Positions 17,949 to 47,815 of a stretch of DNA of 64,000 bases are shown one piece after another. The notes beneath the pieces were generated by a model, which searched no databases, had not been told where the DNA came from, and saw only the letters and a list, made by a program, of their open reading frames with translations. How positions within the stretch are numbered: the first letter of the stretch is position 1; each line of letters opens with the position of its first letter. The stretch spans positions 186,001-250,000 of the IMG/VR virus record IMGVR_UViG_3300044957_000763; one strand, 5' to 3'. The translations under genes and the position numbers were made by a program.

Positions 17949-19004
17949 TCATAGCAACTTGCTCTCTCTCATTGAACCTGTGGTGAGGATTACATACTCT
18001 GTGTTCTCGCGCAACTCGTCAATATTGAATGCTCCGCTATAGCTTAGACCACTGGCGATTCCGCCAAGAATTTCTGCAAGCAGTTCAGACGTATCACCCT
18101 TATACGGCAAAAGCCTGTCAATGCCCTCAGCCGCAATACCTCTGCGTTTTCCAGTATCCTTGTGACGCTCTTGTGCTGTATATGAGCTCATTCCGTAGTA
18201 TTCTTTGAATTGCCCTTCTGGCAACTCGAGCAACGCACCAGGTGTGCTACTCGTGGCAGCAAGCATAGAACCAAGACACACGGCATTCGCACCAAAAGCA
18301 AGTGCTTTTACGATGTCTCCAGATGTCCTTAAACCACCGTCCGCGATGATGGGCACACCGGATTGCCTCGATGCGTCTGCGCAGTCAATAACACTGGCCA
18401 ATGTTGGCATGCCGTGACCAGTGACCATTCGAGTCGTGCATGCGCTTCCACCGCCAATACCAACCCGCACTGCATCCGCACCAGCATCAACCATGCGCAG
18501 GAAACCATGCCTGGTTGCAATGTTGCCGGCAATAACATCTAAGTGTGGGTATTTGGTTTTGACCTCGGTAATCGTATTGCAAACACTGTCGCTGTCTCCG
18601 TGTGCAATGTCAATGATAACACCAGCAAGATGTTCATGGTCTAACCATCCACCATTGATTTCCTCTCCTTTGACACCGATGCTTGCAATACCCCTTACCT
18701 GAGTAAATACATCACGCTTAAAGCATTTTTGAACAAACAGTTTCATTTGTTCTTGGTATTTTTCTGTGCTCATGAAGCGATGCATGAACCCGTAACTACC
18801 AGACTCCCACATATCACACATCATGTCTGACTCAGTGATGGTCGACATATTGGTTGAAACAACTGGGTGCTTGATTTTGATGTTTCTAGTGAGTTGGGTT
18901 TCTAGCGTTGGGGCCGTCCGACTTGGCACATTGCTGTGTTGTGGAACCAACAGGACATCATCAAATGACAAAACGGAATTCTGATACAATGTTGGACTAT
19001 TCAT
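17949..19004 (-). CDS. IMP dehydrogenase / GMP reductase family protein without CBS domains
   Basis: SFDDVLLVP, IDIAHG, VIAGNIAT, GIGGGSACTTR (catalytic Cys), IIADGG, YYGMSS; GMSS is more GMPR-like. Confidence 0.9.
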   Translation of the reverse strand: MNSPTLYQNSVLSFDDVLLVPQHSNVPSRTAPTLETQLTRNIKIKHPVVSTNMSTITESDMMCDMWESGSYGFMHRFMSTEKYQEQMKLFVQKCFKRDVFTQVRGIASIGVKGEEINGGWLDHEHLAGVIIDIAHGDSDSVCNTITEVKTKYPHLDVIAGNIATRHGFLRMVDAGADAVRVGIGGGSACTTRMVTGHGMPTLASVIDCADASRQSGVPIIADGGLRTSGDIVKALAFGANAVCLGSMLAATSSTPGALLELPEGQFKEYYGMSSYTAQERHKDTGKRRGIAAEGIDRLLPYKGDTSELLAEILGGIASGLSYSGAFNIDELRENTEYVILTTGSMRESKLL

Positions 19005-19076
19005 GCCAACTTGATTATGCCAAAAACCGCCCACTTAAAATAATGTTTCTTGAAAACAGAATGTGTAGTTCTAAAA

Positions 19077-19170
19077 TGGTACCCGCACCGGGATTTGAAC
19101 CCGGAAGACTCCCTAATCTGGGGACAATGCACGTTATAAGCGTGGTGTTTTACCGTTAAACTATACGGGC
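19077..19170 (-). tRNA. tRNA-Ile(UAU) with 24-nt variable region
   Basis: GCCCGTA/TGCGGGT acceptor, CCACG-CT TAT AA-CGTGC, T arm CCGGG-TTCAAAT-CCCGG, encoded CCA. Confidence 0.8.
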
Positions 19171-20178: not shown

Positions 20179-20264
20179 TGGAGCCGACACTGGGAATTGA
20201 ACCCAGACTGGATTTCTCCACCTGCTTACCAAGCAGGCTCCGTGACCACTAGGATAATGTCGGC
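20179..20264 (-). tRNA. tRNA-Thr(GGU) with class II-type V-arm
   Basis: GCCGACA/TGTCGGC, CCTGC-TT GGT AA-GCAGG, V-arm TGGA-GAAA-TCCA. Confidence 0.8.
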
Positions 20265-20387: not shown

Positions 20388-21014
20388 TTAGTTATGTGCC
20401 ATTTGAGGTACTTTGGTCAATCTTTCAAAATCAGTCCTGTCTTTGTTGGCATAGATTTTCCAAATGGCTAGGTCAAGTTCTGCAGAATCAACACCAATTT
20501 CATCTGCATAATCCAAATAGATTTTTTCTAGGCGATTGTATTCTTTTTTGCTTCCTGGGGTTGATGTCGGAATATTTGACTCTCCCAAATAATCGCGCAT
20601 AAACTTAAGCAAATGGGTGTCAATGACACCAAAACGCACATTAGGCCTAGTGCAAGTTAAAAAGAAACGAGAGGTTTTAGGACCAATACCATGAATCGAC
20701 TCCAAATCATCGACCGTGCAATTGAAAAGGTCAACACCACTTGAAATTAAAGCACGGAAACAATGCGCAAGCCTGTTGTATTGTCCTAGGCGCGACTCCA
20801 TCAGTTTTTCAAACAAAGCACCTTCAGAATCCATTGTGCGGATTTTGTCAAAAGGGGATGCGCCAACTTTTCCTTTGCTTAAAAAAGAATCAAGAAGCCG
20901 CACTTGCACACTTGCTTTTTTCCCCGCAGCAACAATACAGAAAAGAAGAAAGCACTCTAACTCTTCTTTGGTTCTGTCGAAAATAATTGTATTGTTAGGG
21001 TCTGGAAATCTCAC
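20388..21014 (-). CDS. Helix-hairpin-helix DNA glycosylase-like protein (HhH-GPD/Ogg-like)
   Basis: LESIHGIGPKTSRFFL HhH motif, VIDTHLLKF, ELDLAIW; GTG start. Confidence 0.8.
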   Translation of the reverse strand: MRFPDPNNTIIFDRTKEELECFLLFCIVAAGKKASVQVRLLDSFLSKGKVGASPFDKIRTMDSEGALFEKLMESRLGQYNRLAHCFRALISSGVDLFNCTVDDLESIHGIGPKTSRFFLTCTRPNVRFGVIDTHLLKFMRDYLGESNIPTSTPGSKKEYNRLEKIYLDYADEIGVDSAELDLAIWKIYANKDRTDFERLTKVPQMAHN

Positions 21015-21042: not shown

Positions 21043-21123
21043 TGGCGACCTGTACGGGATTCGAACCCGTCTGATGTCTACCGTGACAGGGTAGTGGGAA
21101 CAACCAAGCTCCCCCCACAGGCC
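21043..21123 (-). tRNA. tRNA-Asp(GUC)
   Basis: CTACC-CT GTC AC-GGTAG, G73, CCA. Confidence 0.9.
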
Positions 21124-21294: not shown

Positions 21295-21377
21295 TGGAGC
21301 TGGCGACAGGATTCGAACCTGCGATGTGGAATCCCTGTTTACAAAACAGGTGCAATCGACCTCTATGCAACGCCAGC
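21295..21377 (-). tRNA. tRNA-Thr(UGU) with 11-nt variable region
   Basis: CCTGT-TT TGT AA-ACAGG, V region GAT-TCCAC-ATC, CCA. Confidence 0.8.
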
Positions 21378-21402: not shown

Positions 21403-21476
21403 TGGCCCCCTCGACAGGAATCGAACCCGTATCATGGGTGTAGAAAACCCAGGCCTTGTCCATTAGACCACGAGGG
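21403..21476 (-). tRNA. tRNA-Arg(UCU)
   Basis: CCCCTCG/CGAGGGG, TGGGT-TT TCT AC-ACCCA, CCA. Confidence 0.9.
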
Positions 21477-21484
21477 GAGAATGC

Positions 21485-21554
21485 ATGCCCTGTATGGAAT
21501 TTAATCCATTCTCCTAGTTTACAGCCAGGTATTGCTCTTCTATACTTACATGGT
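21485..21554 (-). pseudogene. Degenerate tRNA-like sequence with GUA (Tyr) anticodon
   Basis: D stem GTAT/ATAC, loop CT GTA AA, T-like ATGGA-TTAAAT-TCCAT; acceptor only 5/7 paired, no CCA. Confidence 0.4.
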
Positions 21555-21657: not shown

Positions 21658-21739
21658 TGGCCCCTCGAGCGGGATTCGAACCCACATTTTCAGTTCCATT
21701 ACGCTGGACGGTTTAGAAGACCGCGACGACTACCGAGGG
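21658..21739 (-). tRNA. D-arm-less tRNA-Arg(UCU)-like RNA with expanded variable region
   Basis: CCCTCGG/TCGAGGG, 8-nt connector, GCGGT-CT TCT AA-ACCGT, 22-nt V region, canonical T arm, CCA. Confidence 0.75.
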
Positions 21740-22176
21740 ATATGTTGATGAATGGCATTGTGCAGAACAGTGTCTGTATACTGAATTGGTATATTTGGCA
21801 TATTTGATTTGAACGCCTTGGCCTTTTCTTCAATTGAAATTAAGTAATCAGCAGTCAATCCAATCTCAATACATTGCTCAACCTCTTGTGGTTCAATGTA
21901 CCTAAAACCACATTGAGTTCCGTTGAGATAATATGACTTATCATCACGCAGCCCAAGTGCAAAATTTTCTGGAATGGCATACCATTCAGGTGCAATTGAT
22001 AAATCTTTGTTGAGTCCGTGCCTGGATTGCCCTGATTCTGTCAATTCAATTAGGCACAATTTCAGTTTTGAGTCCAGTGTTAGCGGAACTTCGAGGACTT
22101 CAAATAGAGACCATGTTATTTTATTGAGTTGATGCACTGGCAATGAGTTAACTTGGATTTTGATTAATTCACTCAT
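21730..22176 (-). CDS. Hypothetical protein
   Basis: ORF; stop codon lies within the 5' end of the downstream tRNA-like gene. Confidence 0.65.
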   Translation of the reverse strand: MSELIKIQVNSLPVHQLNKITWSLFEVLEVPLTLDSKLKLCLIELTESGQSRHGLNKDLSIAPEWYAIPENFALGLRDDKSYYLNGTQCGFRYIEPQEVEQCIEIGLTADYLISIEEKAKAFKSNMPNIPIQYTDTVLHNAIHQHIPR

Positions 22177-22363
22177 TTTGAAACGTCTCATCTAGCTTGG
22201 TAGAAACTTTGACAACGAAATCTTGAATGTCTTCCTTGAGCAATCCAAGTACATCAGCGACTGGTTGCTCAGCCGCTTTCCCGCGCAATCTGTTCATCAA
22301 AGAACTTGTGATGTCAACTGTCATGCCAACTGCGTGAAGATTTGGGTGGTTCTCGATACTCAT
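22169..22363 (-). CDS. Hypothetical protein
   Basis: 64-aa ORF. Confidence 0.55.
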   Translation of the reverse strand: MSIENHPNLHAVGMTVDITSSLMNRLRGKAAEQPVADVLGLLKEDIQDFVVKVSTKLDETFQNE

Positions 22364-22951: not shown

Positions 22952-23383
22952 TTACATCGACCAAATATAGTCTTTAGCATATGTAAAATTAGGTGCGGTA
23001 TTTTTGGCATCAGAGAGCCTGATTGAAGCCTTGCCTTTGCCAGACCAAATTTCAACTGGAACCCATAATACTTCATTGATTTTTGGAACAAAAACAAGAA
23101 ATACATCAATTTGATTTTTAGTATATCCCTTGCGGATTGTTTTTCCGTTTTTGCTTCTTCCACTCCAACTAGATAGATTTACCACAACACTTCCTTGTGT
23201 TCTTTTGTTTGGTTTTCCATCGGCATATTTGACTTGACACCTATACATTTGACCATTTTTATCAATAATACAATCATATAGGCAACCTTCAATTGTTGGC
23301 TTGCTCAGAATGCAGTTGGTTGTAATTGCCCGCTGCTCTGCTGCAAGCATGGCTAAATGACCCTTTTGAGATGTGGATAACAT
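22952..23383 (-). CDS. PD-(D/E)XK homing-type endonuclease
   Basis: KGHLAM...YDCIIDKNGQMYRCQVKY...YTKNQIDVFLVF, pattern of the PDDEXK_5-like family. Confidence 0.8.
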   Translation of the reverse strand: MLSTSQKGHLAMLAAEQRAITTNCILSKPTIEGCLYDCIIDKNGQMYRCQVKYADGKPNKRTQGSVVVNLSSWSGRSKNGKTIRKGYTKNQIDVFLVFVPKINEVLWVPVEIWSGKGKASIRLSDAKNTAPNFTYAKDYIWSM

Positions 23384-24848: not shown

Positions 24849-24927
24849 TGGAGCGCATGACAGGAATCGAACCTGCATTTTCATCCCTTAACTTATCTAG
24901 TTTCGAAGACTAGTGGTATACATGCGC
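24849..24927 (-). tRNA. D-arm-less tRNA-Arg(UCG)-like RNA with expanded variable region
   Basis: GCGCATG/CATGCGC, 7-nt connector, CTAGT-CT TCG AA-ACTAG, 20-nt V region, T arm GCAGG-TTCGATT-CCTGT, CCA. Confidence 0.75.
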
Positions 24928-26308: not shown

Positions 26309-26384
26309 TGGTCCTCCTGACCGGACTTGAACCGGCTACTTCCTGACAGACAATCAGGTGCTTCGACTCTTGAGCTTCAGAAGG
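26309..26384 (-). tRNA. Atypical tRNA-Asp(GUC)
   Basis: CCTGA-TT GTC TG-TCAGG; pyrimidine at position 37 and A73 are atypical for Asp. Confidence 0.6.
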
Positions 26385-30799: not shown

Positions 30800-30875
30800 T
30801 GGCGCCCCAGGACGGACTCGAACCGCCGTCTCTTACGTTCGAAGCGTAAGTTTCTATCCACTGAATTACTGGGGC
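30800..30875 (-). tRNA. tRNA-Arg(UCG)
   Basis: TTACG-CT TCG AA-CGTAA, CCA. Confidence 0.9.
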
Positions 30876-31064: not shown

Positions 31065-31148
31065 TGGTGCCGCACCTCGGAATCGAACCGAGACAAGAGG
31101 ATGATTTTAAGTCATTTGCTTTTACCAGTTTAGCTACTCCAGTGCGGC
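31065..31148 (-). tRNA. tRNA-Leu(UAA) with 5-nt insertion after the acceptor stem and no V-arm
   Basis: GCCGCAC-TGGAG-TA-D arm; loop CT TAA AA; V region CTCTTGT. Confidence 0.75.
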
Positions 31149-42784: not shown

Positions 42785-42797
42785 TGTATAATCATAT

Positions 42798-42879
42798 TGT
42801 CTCATATTGGGGAATCTGGTGAGAATCCAGAACTGTATCGCAACGGTGTGTTGAAAGACGAGTCCGAATGCCAGAGACT
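42798..42879 (+). promoter_or_regulatory. Cobalamin riboswitch (compact)
   Basis: GGGAA-TCTGG-TGAGAAT-CCAGA-ACTG...CGCAACGGT...GAGTCCGAA-TGCC core; P1 GTCTC/GAGAC; TATAAT at 42787; SD-sequestering hairpin ACCCTC/GAGGGT downstream. Confidence 0.8.
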
Positions 42880-42958
42880 ATAATGCAAACCGCGAGTTAC
42901 GGTTGGGCTAGTTGAATCTGTTTGATTTCAACCCTCAATTTCACTCACGGAGGGTAAC

Positions 42959-46804: not shown

Positions 46805-47815
46805 AGCACTTTGACAGTTTAATAGAATTTCGGCGGTATGGCGTCGGACAAAAAGATATTGCATCGCAAGATGCAGAAAGGGACCAGGTTCTTCAGACCC
46901 CCGCCTTGTAAGTTCGCTTATGAGGTCAGCCATGCAAGTCCAACTTCCTTGGGTTTCGCGCTTCACGGTGCGGAACTAAGCCCCCGCGAAGGGGCGCGAC
47001 AGAAGATGGAGGATAAATGTTGTCAGTGGCCTGGCCGACGGTGAAGCCATTGACAATCATGACACGGCAGTGTCATAAAACCTCACGCAAAACATCGGTG
47101 TCTAAGAAGTCAAGGATAGCCTCGGGGTTCGAGTTGTTGCAGACAAGGGCTTCGTGAGATTTACCTTCGGGTACTTCTTTAGCATAACCAAAGGCAAGAG
47201 CATTGCGGTATAGAATGTAACAGTGGTTACACACTGACCTATTCCATGATGCAGGCGTCTTGAAGTTGAGCAGAGTAGCACGGCAATGTGAAATGTAATA
47301 TTCGGCGTGTTGTATTCGGTAGACCGAAAGGTTTATGGAGCAGCAGCGCGCGCACGTCGAACTGAAGTAGCAAACTAGCTCATTCGGTAGAGCAGTTCCT
47401 TTCAACGGAACAGGTAGTTGGTTCAAGCCCAACGCTTGCAAAAATGCGAAAGCCGCGTGCCGCACAAAACGAAAATGGCTTACTTCCTGAGTGGCAACAT
47501 GTCAGGAGCGACGACAACTCGCAAGGTTGTGGTTGTGTTGGTGAGAACGAAAGATGGTGGGGAGCCCCCCTTTACTGCCCGGCAGGGTAGACGGCAATTA
47601 GAACTTGCTCAGTAGTTTTGTGAACAGGCTCGATAAGCCAATCGAGCATAAACAATGGCAGTCATGCCGACTGACTGGTAGCAATACCAGTGGACAAGCT
47701 GGCAAGCGATGCGCAGACATCGTGTAATCCAGTATGGCGAGTCGGATATGTAGGTGTAGTCTCGACCTGCATGCAGTCCCAGAACCCTGGCCTTGTGTCA
47801 GAGTTCTGGGACTTT
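46805..47815 (+). ncRNA. Giant structured ncRNA, GOLLD-like
   Basis: TGTGTATAAT at 46789-46798; ~1 kb rich in UUCG/GNRA-capped hairpins; embedded tRNA-like element; intrinsic terminator at the 3' end. Confidence 0.65.
47369..47441 (+). tRNA. tRNA-like element with UCA anticodon embedded in the giant ncRNA
   Basis: GCTC-ATTCGGTA-GAGC D arm, GTTCC-TT TCA AC-GGAAC, GTTGG-TTCAAGC-CCAAC; acceptor 5/7 paired, no CCA. Confidence 0.6.

What the first reader, a model, noticed from the sequence alone, without database searches (positions are those of the whole stretch)
21658..21739. D-arm-less Arg(UCU) tRNA with a D-loop-like motif relocated 3' of the anticodon arm
Only 8 nt separate the acceptor and anticodon stems. 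The 22-nt variable region holds CAG-CGUAAUGGAA-CUG; its UAAUGGA matches the D-loop of the canonical Arg(UCU) gene nearby (21403-21476, CUAAUGGAC). Acceptor, anticodon arm, T arm and CCA are intact. Inference: an arm-order-swapped tRNA in which the GG dinucleotide can still dock on the T-loop, either a functional nuclease-resistant decoder or a decoy for anticodon nucleases.
Basis: partly seen in the sequence, partly recalled or inferred. Interest (0 to 1): 0.75.

Follow-up and report, generated by a model that had tools for sequence, protein, structure and literature searches.

The report
Phage arginine tRNA with rearranged core
The flagged sequence is a real, conserved gene for an arginine tRNA of an apparently undescribed shape, widespread in phages and missed by standard tRNA finders, in which the usual D-arm hairpin is replaced by a helix that carries the D-loop motif as a bulge.

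Summary
Window 21739..21658 (minus strand) has an intact acceptor stem, UCU anticodon arm, T arm and CCA. Only 8 nt separate the acceptor and anticodon stems, and UAAUGGA lies 3' of the anticodon arm.

It is neither decay nor chance. I found more than 150 distinct relatives in phage and metagenome contigs, and a second copy in this window (24927..24849, Arg-UCG). Unannotated copies exist in cultured phages: Pseudomonas PA11-like, Stenotrophomonas SOVA965, Agrobacterium Atu_ph04 and Limnohabitans DC31.

Covariation shows instead that the 8-nt connector pairs with both flanks of the motif. C12-G13-U14 pairs with GCG (H1) and G10-U11 with AC (H2). UAAUGGA is therefore a 7-nt bulge in a long composite anticodon-side arm. 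A Levitt-like tertiary pair also covaries (A/U 142, G/C 9).

Anticodons are mostly Arg, and the A after GG (the ArgRS determinant A20) is kept only in Arg-type members. In complete phage genomes these genes fill gaps in the tRNA set; in PA11 this is the only tRNA.

Most likely it is a working AGA decoder. Expression and charging remain unproven, and the nuclease-evasion or decoy idea is untested.

The parts
21658..21739 (-). Whole gene: rearranged-core tRNA-Arg(UCU), 82 nt including the encoded CCA
   Evidence: Sequence. Jackknife model R2 gives 83.0 bits, E 4.8e-17. R1 gives 88.3 bits.
21733..21739 (-). Acceptor stem 5' strand, CCCUCGG (RNA positions 1-7)
   Evidence: Pairs with 21662-21668. 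The family acceptor stem is 97-99% paired, and all 7 pairs show changes on both sides in A2-A4.
21729..21732 (-). Connector, H2 5' strand, U8 A9 G10 U11
   Evidence: Pair 10-52 is GC47 AU21 CG2 UA1. Pair 11-51 is CG28 UA22 AU6 UG6, other 9. U8.G and A9-U are invariant, so their pairing is inferred only.
21726..21728 (-). Connector, H1 5' strand, C12 G13 U14
   Evidence: Pairs with GCG at 21702-21704. H1 is 100% paired in A1, 96% in A2, 87.5% in A3 and 91% in A4, with 3-6 pair types per position.
21708..21724 (-). Anticodon arm GCGGU CUUCUAA ACCGU; anticodon UCU at 21715-21717
   Evidence: All five stem pairs covary in the family.
21702..21704 (-). H1 3' strand GCG, preceded by the linker CCA at 21705-21707
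21695..21701 (-). D-loop-like 7-nt bulge UAAUGGA. By analogy: U13, A14, A15, U16, G18, G19, A20.
   Evidence: The motif UAA(N1-2)GGA is recovered in a scan that did not use it. Its third base covaries with the base before the T stem.
21691..21694 (-). H2 3' strand ACUG. A pairs with U11 and C with G10. The UG faces A9 and U8.
21686..21690 (-). Junction AAAAU. The last U is the '48-like' partner of the third bulge base.
   Evidence: The 15-like/48-like combinations are A/U 142, G/C 9, G/U 2, A/C 0 among 153 sequences.
21669..21685 (-). T arm GUGGG UUCGAAU CCCGC
   Evidence: The family T stem is 98-100% paired.
21658..21668 (-). Acceptor stem 3' strand UCGAGGG, discriminator G, CCA
24849..24927 (-). 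Second family member in the window: rearranged-core tRNA-Arg(UCG), 79 nt, more divergent (bulge UAAGGG; H1 = A-U, C-G, C*A)
   Evidence: R1 64.7 bits and R2 63.7 bits. Rfam tRNA 40.6 bits. Missed by ARAGORN.
21403..21477 (-). Canonical tRNA-Arg(UCU), for comparison, with D-loop AAUGGACA
   Evidence: ARAGORN; Rfam 55.6 bits; sequence.
30800..30875 (-). Canonical tRNA-Arg(UCG), the twin of the second rearranged gene

Best explanation
The element is a gene for a tRNA-Arg(UCU) belonging to a conserved, phage-borne class of tRNAs with a rearranged core.

Shown: the acceptor, anticodon and T arms are standard. There is no D hairpin. Instead the 8-nt 5' connector forms one continuous strand of a helix. 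Its partner strand is supplied by two pieces of the long 'variable' region. GCG pairs with C12-G13-U14 (H1) and AC pairs with G10-U11 (H2). Between them, UAAUGGA is left as a 7-nt bulge. The anticodon arm caps this helix, so the RNA is a three-way junction: the acceptor stem, a long H2-H1-anticodon arm, and the T arm. A tertiary pair is supported by covariation between the third bulge base (A or G) and the base just before the T stem (U or C). This follows the rule of the canonical 15-48 Levitt pair.

Inferred: the bulge plays the part of the D loop. Its GG would contact the T loop, and its following A would serve as the ArgRS determinant A20. The composite arm would keep the canonical anticodon-to-elbow distance, so the RNA folds into an L shape. 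It would then be processed, arginylated by ArgRS (host, or the phage's own) and used on the ribosome to read AGA/AGG.

Why this shape is selected over the canonical one is unknown. Escape from tRNA-directed nucleases is a plausible but untested reason.
For: 1. Family: more than 150 distinct relatives were found, and the window copy passes a jackknife model.
2. Structure: H1 and H2 covary on structure-blind MAFFT alignments. RNAalifold predicts exactly the five-helix structure (-28.91 kcal/mol, of which -9.61 is covariation). Slid controls give 34-47% paired against 96-98% observed on the MAFFT alignments.
3. Tertiary pair: A/U 142, G/C 9, G/U 2, A/C 0. U8 and A9 are invariant in 153/153 sequences.
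4. Identity: anticodons are Arg UCU, UCG, ACG, CCU and CCG, plus a smaller Ile-type group (GAU, UAU, CAU). The base after GG is A in 43/45 Arg-type rows and never A in 8 non-Arg rows. A20 and C35 are the main bacterial ArgRS determinants (PMC9976931).
5. Non-redundancy: complete phage G003 has canonical tRNAs for 19 amino acids but none for Ile and no Arg(UCU). Its rearranged genes are exactly Ile GAU, Ile UAU and Arg UCU. Complete phage G004 has a rearranged Arg(ACG) and no canonical ACG. In PA11 and vB_PaeM_Ty the rearranged Arg(UCU) is the only tRNA-model hit in the genome.
6. Demand: in this phage AGA (27.9%) and CGA (21.6%) are the commonest Arg codons, and they match the two rearranged genes. 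PA11 has 44.8% GC and uses AGA+AGG for 41.7% of Arg codons. Its relative TC6 has 45% GC against 66% for its host (PMC6209634).
7. Re-ordering the segments in silico yields 75-nt cloverleaves that ARAGORN calls with the right anticodon in 48/54 cases, against 0/54 for the native sequences.
8. A near-identical copy occurs in contigs of wastewater RNA libraries, with coverage confined to the tRNA cluster.
Against: There is no direct evidence of a mature transcript, of aminoacylation or of ribosomal use. The RNA-library contigs may derive from DNA and come from a relative, not this phage. For the single sequence the proposed fold (-23.6 kcal/mol) is 2 kcal/mol above the MFE (-25.6), and the fold z-score is only -0.96. 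The third H1 pair is weak (63-77% paired in the two larger sets, A3 and A4). The U8.G and A9-U pairs are invariant, so they are untested by covariation, and they would compete with a canonical U8-A14 contact. The 3D fold is therefore open. The search patterns fixed part of the sequence: GTAAYGGAA and the T loop; the anticodon loop, TGAAAAT and TTCGA. Conservation of those letters is therefore partly by construction. In this genome both rearranged genes have canonical twins, so here they could be dispensable.
Confidence: 0.7

Rival explanations
1. It is a tRNA-like decoy or sponge, or has another non-translational role. It would keep the anticodon arm and enough tRNA shape to bind a host tRNA-targeting nuclease or other tRNA-binding factor, but would not be used in translation.
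For: The core is non-canonical, and standard tRNA-binding proteins might not accept it. In this genome canonical tRNAs with the same anticodons exist.
Against: A decoy would not need a covarying 7-bp acceptor stem, a discriminator, an encoded CCA and the ArgRS determinants A20 and C35. The genes fill exactly the missing isoacceptors in complete phage tRNA sets. One is the sole tRNA gene of PA11-like phages, whose AGA/AGG use is high. Anticodons diversify within Arg and Ile boxes, as decoders do.
Confidence: 0.15
2. One reading: a D-arm-less tRNA whose D hairpin (CAG-CGUAAUGGAA-CUG) has moved into the variable region, with the 8-nt connector single-stranded.
For: In the window copy CAG and CUG can pair (-23.2 kcal/mol).
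Against: Across 13 relatives these three pairs are formed in 44% of cells with no compensatory change. G37 of that hairpin is used in H1, which is 100% paired with compensatory changes in the same alignment. RNAalifold on 71 sequences chooses H1+H2.
Confidence: 0.03
3. It is a decaying pseudogene, produced by an illegitimate recombination within the tRNA array.
For: It lies in a dense tRNA array that also contains weak tRNA-like remnants (21486-21554, 20.2 bits), and tRNA finders reject it.
Against: The same architecture recurs in more than 150 distinct sequences from unrelated phages, with compensatory changes in all five helices. It includes genomes where it is the only tRNA gene.
Confidence: 0.02
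4. It is a precursor that is cut and re-ligated into a canonical tRNA, by analogy with the permuted tRNA genes of Cyanidioschyzon merolae.
For: Re-ordering the segments in silico gives a canonical 75-nt cloverleaf.
Against: The acceptor strands are already in normal order, so circularisation cannot restore the canonical order. That would need excision and re-insertion of an internal block. H2 and the A-rich junction are conserved, though they would be discarded in such a process.
Confidence: 0.03

Closest known systems
Canonical bacterial and phage tRNA-Arg (for example the neighbouring Arg(UCU) gene at 21403-21477)
   Same: 7-bp acceptor stem, 5-bp T stem with UUCGAAU, 5-bp anticodon stem with a CUUCUAA-type loop, U8, a purine at position 9, a UAAUGGA motif with GG and A20, a 15/48-type covarying pair, discriminator G and CCA.
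   Different: There is no D hairpin. The strand after U8-A9 runs straight into the anticodon stem. Its partners lie 3' of the anticodon arm, and the D-loop motif is a bulge rather than a hairpin loop. A 5-nt A-rich junction replaces the variable loop. ARAGORN misses it, and it scores weakly or below threshold with Rfam RF00005.
D-arm-lacking mitochondrial tRNA-Ser(AGY/UCU) of metazoa (reviewed in PMC7609411)
   Same: There is no D hairpin, and the short 5' connector lies next to the anticodon stem. From my own knowledge, pairing between the two connectors has been proposed there to lengthen the anticodon-side arm.
   Different: The phage class keeps a D-loop-like motif with GG, a standard T loop and a Levitt-like covarying pair, so an elbow contact is plausible. 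It is 76-86 nt long rather than shortened. It occurs in phages of bacteria and specifies Arg or Ile rather than Ser.
Circularly permuted tRNA genes of the red alga Cyanidioschyzon merolae (from my own knowledge)
   Same: The order of tRNA segments in the gene differs from the canonical order.
   Different: In the alga the 3' half precedes the 5' half, and processing through a circular intermediate restores a canonical tRNA. In the phage class the termini are normal and only the internal D/anticodon block is rearranged, so the mature RNA should keep the new order.
Allo-tRNAs and other non-canonical cloverleaves found in metagenomes (Mukai et al., PMC5389517)
   Same: These are natural tRNAs with unusual architecture. 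Some occur in phages, they were discovered by sequence mining, and they are missed or mis-scored by standard tools.
   Different: Allo-tRNAs change the acceptor/T split (8/4 or 9/3) and keep a D hairpin and a long V arm. The phage class keeps the 7/5 split and re-wires the D region.

Membership tests
Canonical cloverleaf tRNA (Rfam RF00005, ARAGORN) | 7-bp acceptor stem, 5-bp T stem with a 7-nt T loop, and a 5-bp anticodon stem with a 7-nt loop carrying U33 | tested here: met
   covariation.
Canonical cloverleaf tRNA (Rfam RF00005, ARAGORN) | D hairpin (stem 10-13/22-25 closing the D loop) between position 9 and the anticodon stem | tested here: not met
   Only 8 nt lie between the acceptor and anticodon stems. 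The D-loop motif lies 3' of the anticodon arm.
Canonical cloverleaf tRNA (Rfam RF00005, ARAGORN) | Reaches the Rfam gathering score (29 bits) or is called by ARAGORN | tested here: not met
   The window copy has no RF00005 hit at gathering score and no ARAGORN call. ARAGORN/54 family members when each is tested on its own. With genomic flanks it called the LR745206 homologue, but as a mis-delimited 90-nt Arg(tct). Other members reach 32-44 bits with RF00005.
Rearranged-core phage tRNA class (defined here; model R2) | Helix H1: connector positions 12-14 pair with the 3 nt immediately 5' of the UAA..GG motif | tested here: met
   CGU/GCG in the window copy. Family covariation.
Rearranged-core phage tRNA class (defined here; model R2) | Helix H2: connector positions 10-11 pair with the 2 nt immediately 5' of the conserved UG of the tail | tested here: met
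   GU/AC in the window copy. Pair 10-52 is 100% standard with four pair types.
Rearranged-core phage tRNA class (defined here; model R2) | Bulge motif UAA(N1-2)GGA, tail UG-AAAA-U, and invariant U8 A9 | tested here: met
   UAAUGGA, UGAAAAU and U8 A9 are all present.
Rearranged-core phage tRNA class (defined here; model R2) | High score with a model built without the window sequence | tested here: met
   83.0 bits, E 4.8e-17, against at most 34.1 bits for canonical tRNAs.
Substrates of bacterial ArgRS (tRNA-Arg identity; PMC9976931) | A20 in the D loop, C35, U/G36 and A/G73 | tested here: inconclusive
   C35, U36 and G73 are present. An A follows GG in the bulge, as A20 follows G19. Whether it occupies the A20 pocket of ArgRS depends on the 3D fold.
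Substrates of bacterial ArgRS (tRNA-Arg identity; PMC9976931) | Aminoacylation with arginine | not testable with these tools
   The complex prediction was not run by the tool for an RNA partner.
D-arm-lacking mitochondrial tRNA-Ser | No D stem and no D-loop/T-loop interaction motif; shortened RNA; metazoan mitochondria; Ser identity | tested here: not met
   The GG motif and a standard T loop are kept. The RNA is 82 nt long, comes from a phage genome and carries an Arg anticodon.
Circularly permuted tRNA genes (C. merolae type) | The 3' half is encoded upstream of the 5' half, with acceptor termini joined through an intervening sequence | tested here: not met
   The acceptor 5' strand is at the 5' end and the 3' strand plus CCA at the 3' end.
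tRNA-Sec (Rfam RF01852) | Gathering score of 47 bits, with the long acceptor and D stems of tRNA-Sec | tested here: not met
   24.5 bits, with many non-standard pairs and a different, unsupported acceptor stem.

The most novel reading that the evidence does not exclude
A natural, translationally active tRNA topology exists in which the D stem is built from the 5' connector and the region 3' of the anticodon arm, and the D loop is a bulge. It is widespread in phages of bacteria, so phage tRNA complements are systematically under-counted (for example, 'no intact tRNA' was reported for PA11-like phages). It has been selected because the re-wired core escapes tRNA-directed nucleases, either of host defence systems or of the phage's own host shut-off, while still being accepted by ArgRS or IleRS, EF-Tu and the ribosome.
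Probability: 0.2. Interest if true: 0.92.

Novelty: new variant of a known kind. Interest (0 to 1): 0.86.

Why it matters
The cloverleaf order of arms is one of the most invariant features in biology outside animal mitochondria. If these RNAs are charged and decode, they show that bacterial RNase P, CCA enzyme, ArgRS or IleRS, EF-Tu and the ribosome tolerate a re-wired tRNA core. That would be a natural experiment on which tRNA features are truly required. It would also give a new scaffold for orthogonal tRNAs.

There is a practical consequence too. ARAGORN missed all the native members tested on their own. Its one call within genomic flanks was a mis-delimited 90-nt gene. The genome paper for the PA11-like phage TC6 reports no intact tRNA. 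Phage tRNA censuses and codon-supply analyses therefore miss these genes.

Cultured carriers exist: PA11-like Pseudomonas phages, Agrobacterium phage Atu_ph04, Stenotrophomonas phage SOVA965 and Limnohabitans phage DC31. The question is therefore directly testable at the bench.

Tried and rejected
- My first 3D idea was a strictly isosteric circular permutation of the D/anticodon domain, with U8-A14 and A21 retained. I weakened it once H2 was found. The base I had read as A21 pairs with position 11, and U8/A9 may pair with the tail UG.
- The strand-swap control for the in-silico un-permutation was uninformative. Swapping the strands of a helix keeps the pairing, and 50/54 were still called.
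- Complex prediction with E. coli ArgRS plus the RNA was not folded by the tool. It is no evidence either way.
- Expression: two run searches and the single read-laying run gave only contigs of a relative in wastewater RNA libraries. This is suggestive, not proof.
- The promoter scan found nothing convincing upstream of the candidate.
- The HNH homing endonuclease link: HNH genes lie directly upstream in PA11-like phages and, with gaps of 159-193 nt, in L390 and SOVA965. Only 5 of 135 loci show this, and the window's upstream ORF (21730-22191) is not an HNH gene.
- The Rfam tRNA-Sec hit (24.5 bits) is an artefact of the long variable region.
- A structural scanner of my own found no further rearranged genes of other identities in this genome.
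- Nine literature searches found no description of this architecture. The library lacks most subscription journals.

Full report
**Context.** The window is bases 186001-250000 of a 478,840-bp phage genome with direct terminal repeats. The same DNA occurs in lake-water metagenomes. The minus strand between about 19 and 31.6 kb is a dense tRNA array. ARAGORN genes in the window and 63 in the genome.

**The observation.** The flagged stretch, read on the minus strand from 21739 to 21658, is CCCUCGG UAGUCGUC GCGGU CUUCUAA ACCGU CCAGCGUAAUGGAACUGAAAAU GUGGG UUCGAAU CCCGC UCGAGGG G CCA.
- an intact acceptor stem, UCU anticodon arm, T arm and CCA;
- 8 nt between the acceptor and anticodon stems;
- UAAUGGA 3' of the anticodon arm, identical to the D-loop stretch of the canonical Arg(UCU) gene at 21403-21477.

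ARAGORN does not call it. Rfam tRNA does not reach threshold. A weak tRNA-Sec hit (24.5 bits against 47) is an artefact. The fold of the single sequence is not better than shuffles (z -0.96).

**It belongs to a large family.**
- BLAST found a homologue in an uncultured 634,780-bp phage (LR745206.1), directly upstream of a canonical Arg(UCU) gene.
- Pattern scans of viral contigs, metagenome contigs and prokaryote genomes, filtered with a covariance model, gave 53 distinct members.
- A scan that used only the anticodon loop, the tail TGAAAAT and TTCGA, and so was blind to the D-loop motif and the connector, gave another 102 distinct members from contigs of about 4 to 460 kb.
- Among one genome each of about 185,000 prokaryote species, the Arg-type pattern hit only canonical tRNAs, except for one contig binned into a Saccharibacteria MAG.
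- The window holds a second, more divergent member at 24927..24849 with anticodon UCG. The rest of the genome holds none.
- A model built from 70 other sequences, with its structure taken from RNAalifold, scores the candidate at 83.0 bits with all 24 pairs standard. It scores the second member at 63.7 bits and the best canonical tRNA at 34.1 bits.

**Structure.** It is 44% paired with no compensatory change. Two other helices are supported.
- H1: connector positions 12-14 pair with the three bases just 5' of UAA. This is CGU/GCG in the window copy, and CCC/GGG, CGG/CCG, CGA/UCG, CAC/GUG, CAG/CUG or CAU/AUG elsewhere. H1 is 100% paired in the first MAFFT alignment, 96% in A2, 87.5% in A3 and 91% in A4. 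The third pair is the weakest.
- H2: connector positions 10 and 11 pair with the two bases just 5' of the conserved UG of the tail. Pair 10 is GC47 AU21 CG2 UA1. Pair 11 is CG28 UA22 AU6 UG6, with 9 unpaired.
- U8 and A9 could continue H2 against that UG. All four bases are invariant, so this extension is not tested.

RNAalifold on the structure-blind alignment of 71 sequences returns exactly this five-helix structure. The RNA is therefore not D-arm-less. The connector is one strand of a 5-7-bp helix whose other strand is interrupted by UAAUGGA as a 7-nt bulge, and the anticodon arm caps the helix. For the window sequence the nearest-neighbour energy of this fold is -23.6 kcal/mol, against an MFE of -25.6.

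**Tertiary clues.**
- The third base of the bulge and the base just before the T stem occur as A/U 142 times, G/C 9, G/U 2 and A/C never. Both states occur among close relatives and in both Arg and Ile types. This is the rule of the canonical 15-48 Levitt pair.
- U8 and A9 are invariant in 153/153 sequences, although no search pattern required them.
- GG is nearly invariant in the unbiased set.
- Counting stacked layers (H2 up to 4, H1 3, one internal-loop layer, anticodon stem 5) gives about the length of the canonical anticodon stem plus 26-44, plus D stem, plus core layers. This comparison rests on my own knowledge of tRNA structure. The 3D fold remains inferred.

**Function.** The evidence is indirect but consistent.
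- Identity: the anticodons are UCU, UCG, ACG, CCU and CCG (all Arg), a smaller group GAU, UAU and CAU (Ile-like), and single CUU and UCA cases. The base after GG is A in 43/45 Arg-type rows and never A in the 8 non-Arg rows. A20 and C35 are the main determinants for bacterial ArgRS (PMC9976931). The first two patterns forced GGAA, but the unbiased scan still shows GGA almost always.
- Gap-filling: complete phage G003 (405 kb) has canonical tRNAs for 19 amino acids but none for Ile and no Arg(UCU). Its rearranged genes are Ile GAU, Ile UAU and Arg UCU. Complete phage G004 (151 kb) has a rearranged Arg(ACG) and no canonical one.
- Sole tRNA: in Pseudomonas phages PA11 and vB_PaeM_Ty the rearranged Arg(UCU) is the only tRNA-model hit in the genome. 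PA11 has 44.8% GC and uses AGA+AGG for 41.7% of Arg codons. The paper on its relative TC6 reports 45% GC against 66% for the host, and 'No intact tRNA genes' (PMC6209634).
- Demand in this phage: AGA (27.9%) and CGA (21.6%) are the commonest Arg codons, matching its two rearranged genes. Canonical twins also exist here.
- ArgRS: the genome encodes an ArgRS-like protein outside the window, with a catalytic core and a DALR domain. Pfam recognises no N-terminal D-loop-binding domain in it. Four other carrier genomes have no ArgRS, so host ArgRS must serve there.
- Re-ordering: rearranging the segments in silico gives 75-nt cloverleaves that ARAGORN accepts in 48/54 cases, against 0/54 for the native sequences.

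**Expression.** Wastewater metatranscriptome assemblies contain a 176-nt contig covering 21653-21761. No differences are listed inside the gene, the flanks differ, and nothing covers the upstream ORF. This shows a near-identical gene in a related phage and fits transcription of the tRNA cluster. DNA carry-over cannot be excluded.

**Cultured carriers.** Unannotated members, all missed by ARAGORN, occur in the following phages:
- Pseudomonas phage PA11 (NC_007808.1, about 47672-47754) and at least eight related records;
- Stenotrophomonas phage SOVA965;
- Agrobacterium phage Atu_ph04;
- Limnohabitans phage DC31.

**Comparison with known systems, and novelty.** The RNA works like a tRNA-Arg but fails the defining D-hairpin feature of the cloverleaf.
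- It resembles D-arm-lacking mitochondrial tRNA-Ser in having connector-based extension of the anticodon-side arm. Unlike those, it keeps a D-loop-like motif, a standard T loop and normal length.
- It differs from the permuted tRNA genes of C. merolae, where processing restores a canonical tRNA.
- It differs from allo-tRNAs, which alter the acceptor/T split.

Nine searches of the held literature, including reviews of non-canonical tRNAs (PMC7609411, PMC5389517), found no description. That library is incomplete.

**Verdict.** The candidate is a member of a conserved, apparently undescribed phage tRNA class with a re-wired core, most likely an AGA/AGG decoder.

Noticed in passing
window 24849-24927 (-): A second rearranged-core tRNA, Arg(UCG), 79 nt, with bulge UAAGGG and a C*A mismatch in H1. 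Rfam tRNA hits it at 40.6 bits; ARAGORN misses it.
   Followed up: yes
L104:11178-11259 (-), L286:7068-7149 (-), L275:834-915 (+), L172:1501-1582 (+): Ile(GAU)-type rearranged tRNAs lie directly upstream of the Arg(UCU)-type gene in several phages. In L286, L275 and L172 (not L104, which has a standard T arm) the T arm is unusual but conserved: GAGAU CUCAGAA CUCUC, with no UUCGA loop. The acceptor stem shows compensatory changes.
   Followed up: partly
L430:440-530 (+) and L407:11000-11080 (-): Family members with anticodon UCA (keeps GGAA; possibly an opal-reading derivative of an Arg type) and CUU (Lys-like).
   Followed up: no
window 19077-19170, 20179-20264, 21043-21123, 21295-21377 (all -): Canonical-D-arm tRNAs for Ile(UAU), Thr(GGU), Asp(GUC) and Thr(UGU) are 81-94 nt long because of long variable arms, which these amino-acid classes do not normally have.
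   Followed up: partly
window 26312-26384 (-) and 31068-31143 (-): Two further tRNAs reach the Rfam gathering score (43.3 and 36.8 bits) but are not called by ARAGORN. By eye they read as Asp(GUC) and Leu(UAA).
   Followed up: partly
window 21486-21554 (-): A weak tRNA-like remnant (RF00005, 20.2 bits) lies in the 180-nt spacer between the candidate and the canonical Arg(UCU) gene. Relatives in wastewater libraries have a different spacer here (206 other letters).
   Followed up: no
window 47368-47442 (+); also a tRNA(CUA) elsewhere in the genome: ARAGORN labels tRNAs with anticodons UCA ('SeC') and CUA ('Pyl'). These are suppressor-like tRNAs that may point to stop-codon read-through or recoding in this phage. 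I did not test the genetic code.
   Followed up: no
window 42796-42881 (+): An AdoCbl-II (cobalamin) riboswitch aptamer lies above the Rfam gathering score (40.7 against 36.5 bits) in a phage genome.
   Followed up: no
genome G000 263822-265501 (-), outside the window (L381:1015-2694): A phage-encoded ArgRS-like protein of 559 aa, with the class I (R) catalytic domain and the DALR domain. Its first ~120 residues match no Pfam family, so the usual D-loop-binding N-terminal domain is not recognisable.
   Followed up: partly
L478:1038-1490 (+) (PA11), L482, L464, L390, L480:955-1491 (+) (SOVA965): HNH homing endonuclease genes lie upstream of the rearranged tRNA in a few phages. In PA11-like phages they overlap it by 23 nt; in L390 and SOVA965 the gap is 159-193 nt. 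Only 5 of 135 loci show this.
   Followed up: yes
window 17949-19034 (-), 20388-21014 (-), 22952-23383 (-): Genes interspersed in the tRNA array include an IMPDH/GMP-reductase-family protein, an Ogg-HhH glycosylase-like protein and a PD-(D/E)XK endonuclease (PF11645). The ORF overlapping the candidate's 5' end (21730-22191) matches nothing in Pfam or PHROGs.
   Followed up: partly
L260:6115-6194 (+): The only Arg-type member found among about 185,000 prokaryote genomes lies on a 139-kb contig binned into a Candidatus Saccharibacteria MAG, next to a tRNA-Leu(UAA) and among short ORFs. It is possibly a mis-binned phage contig.
   Followed up: partly
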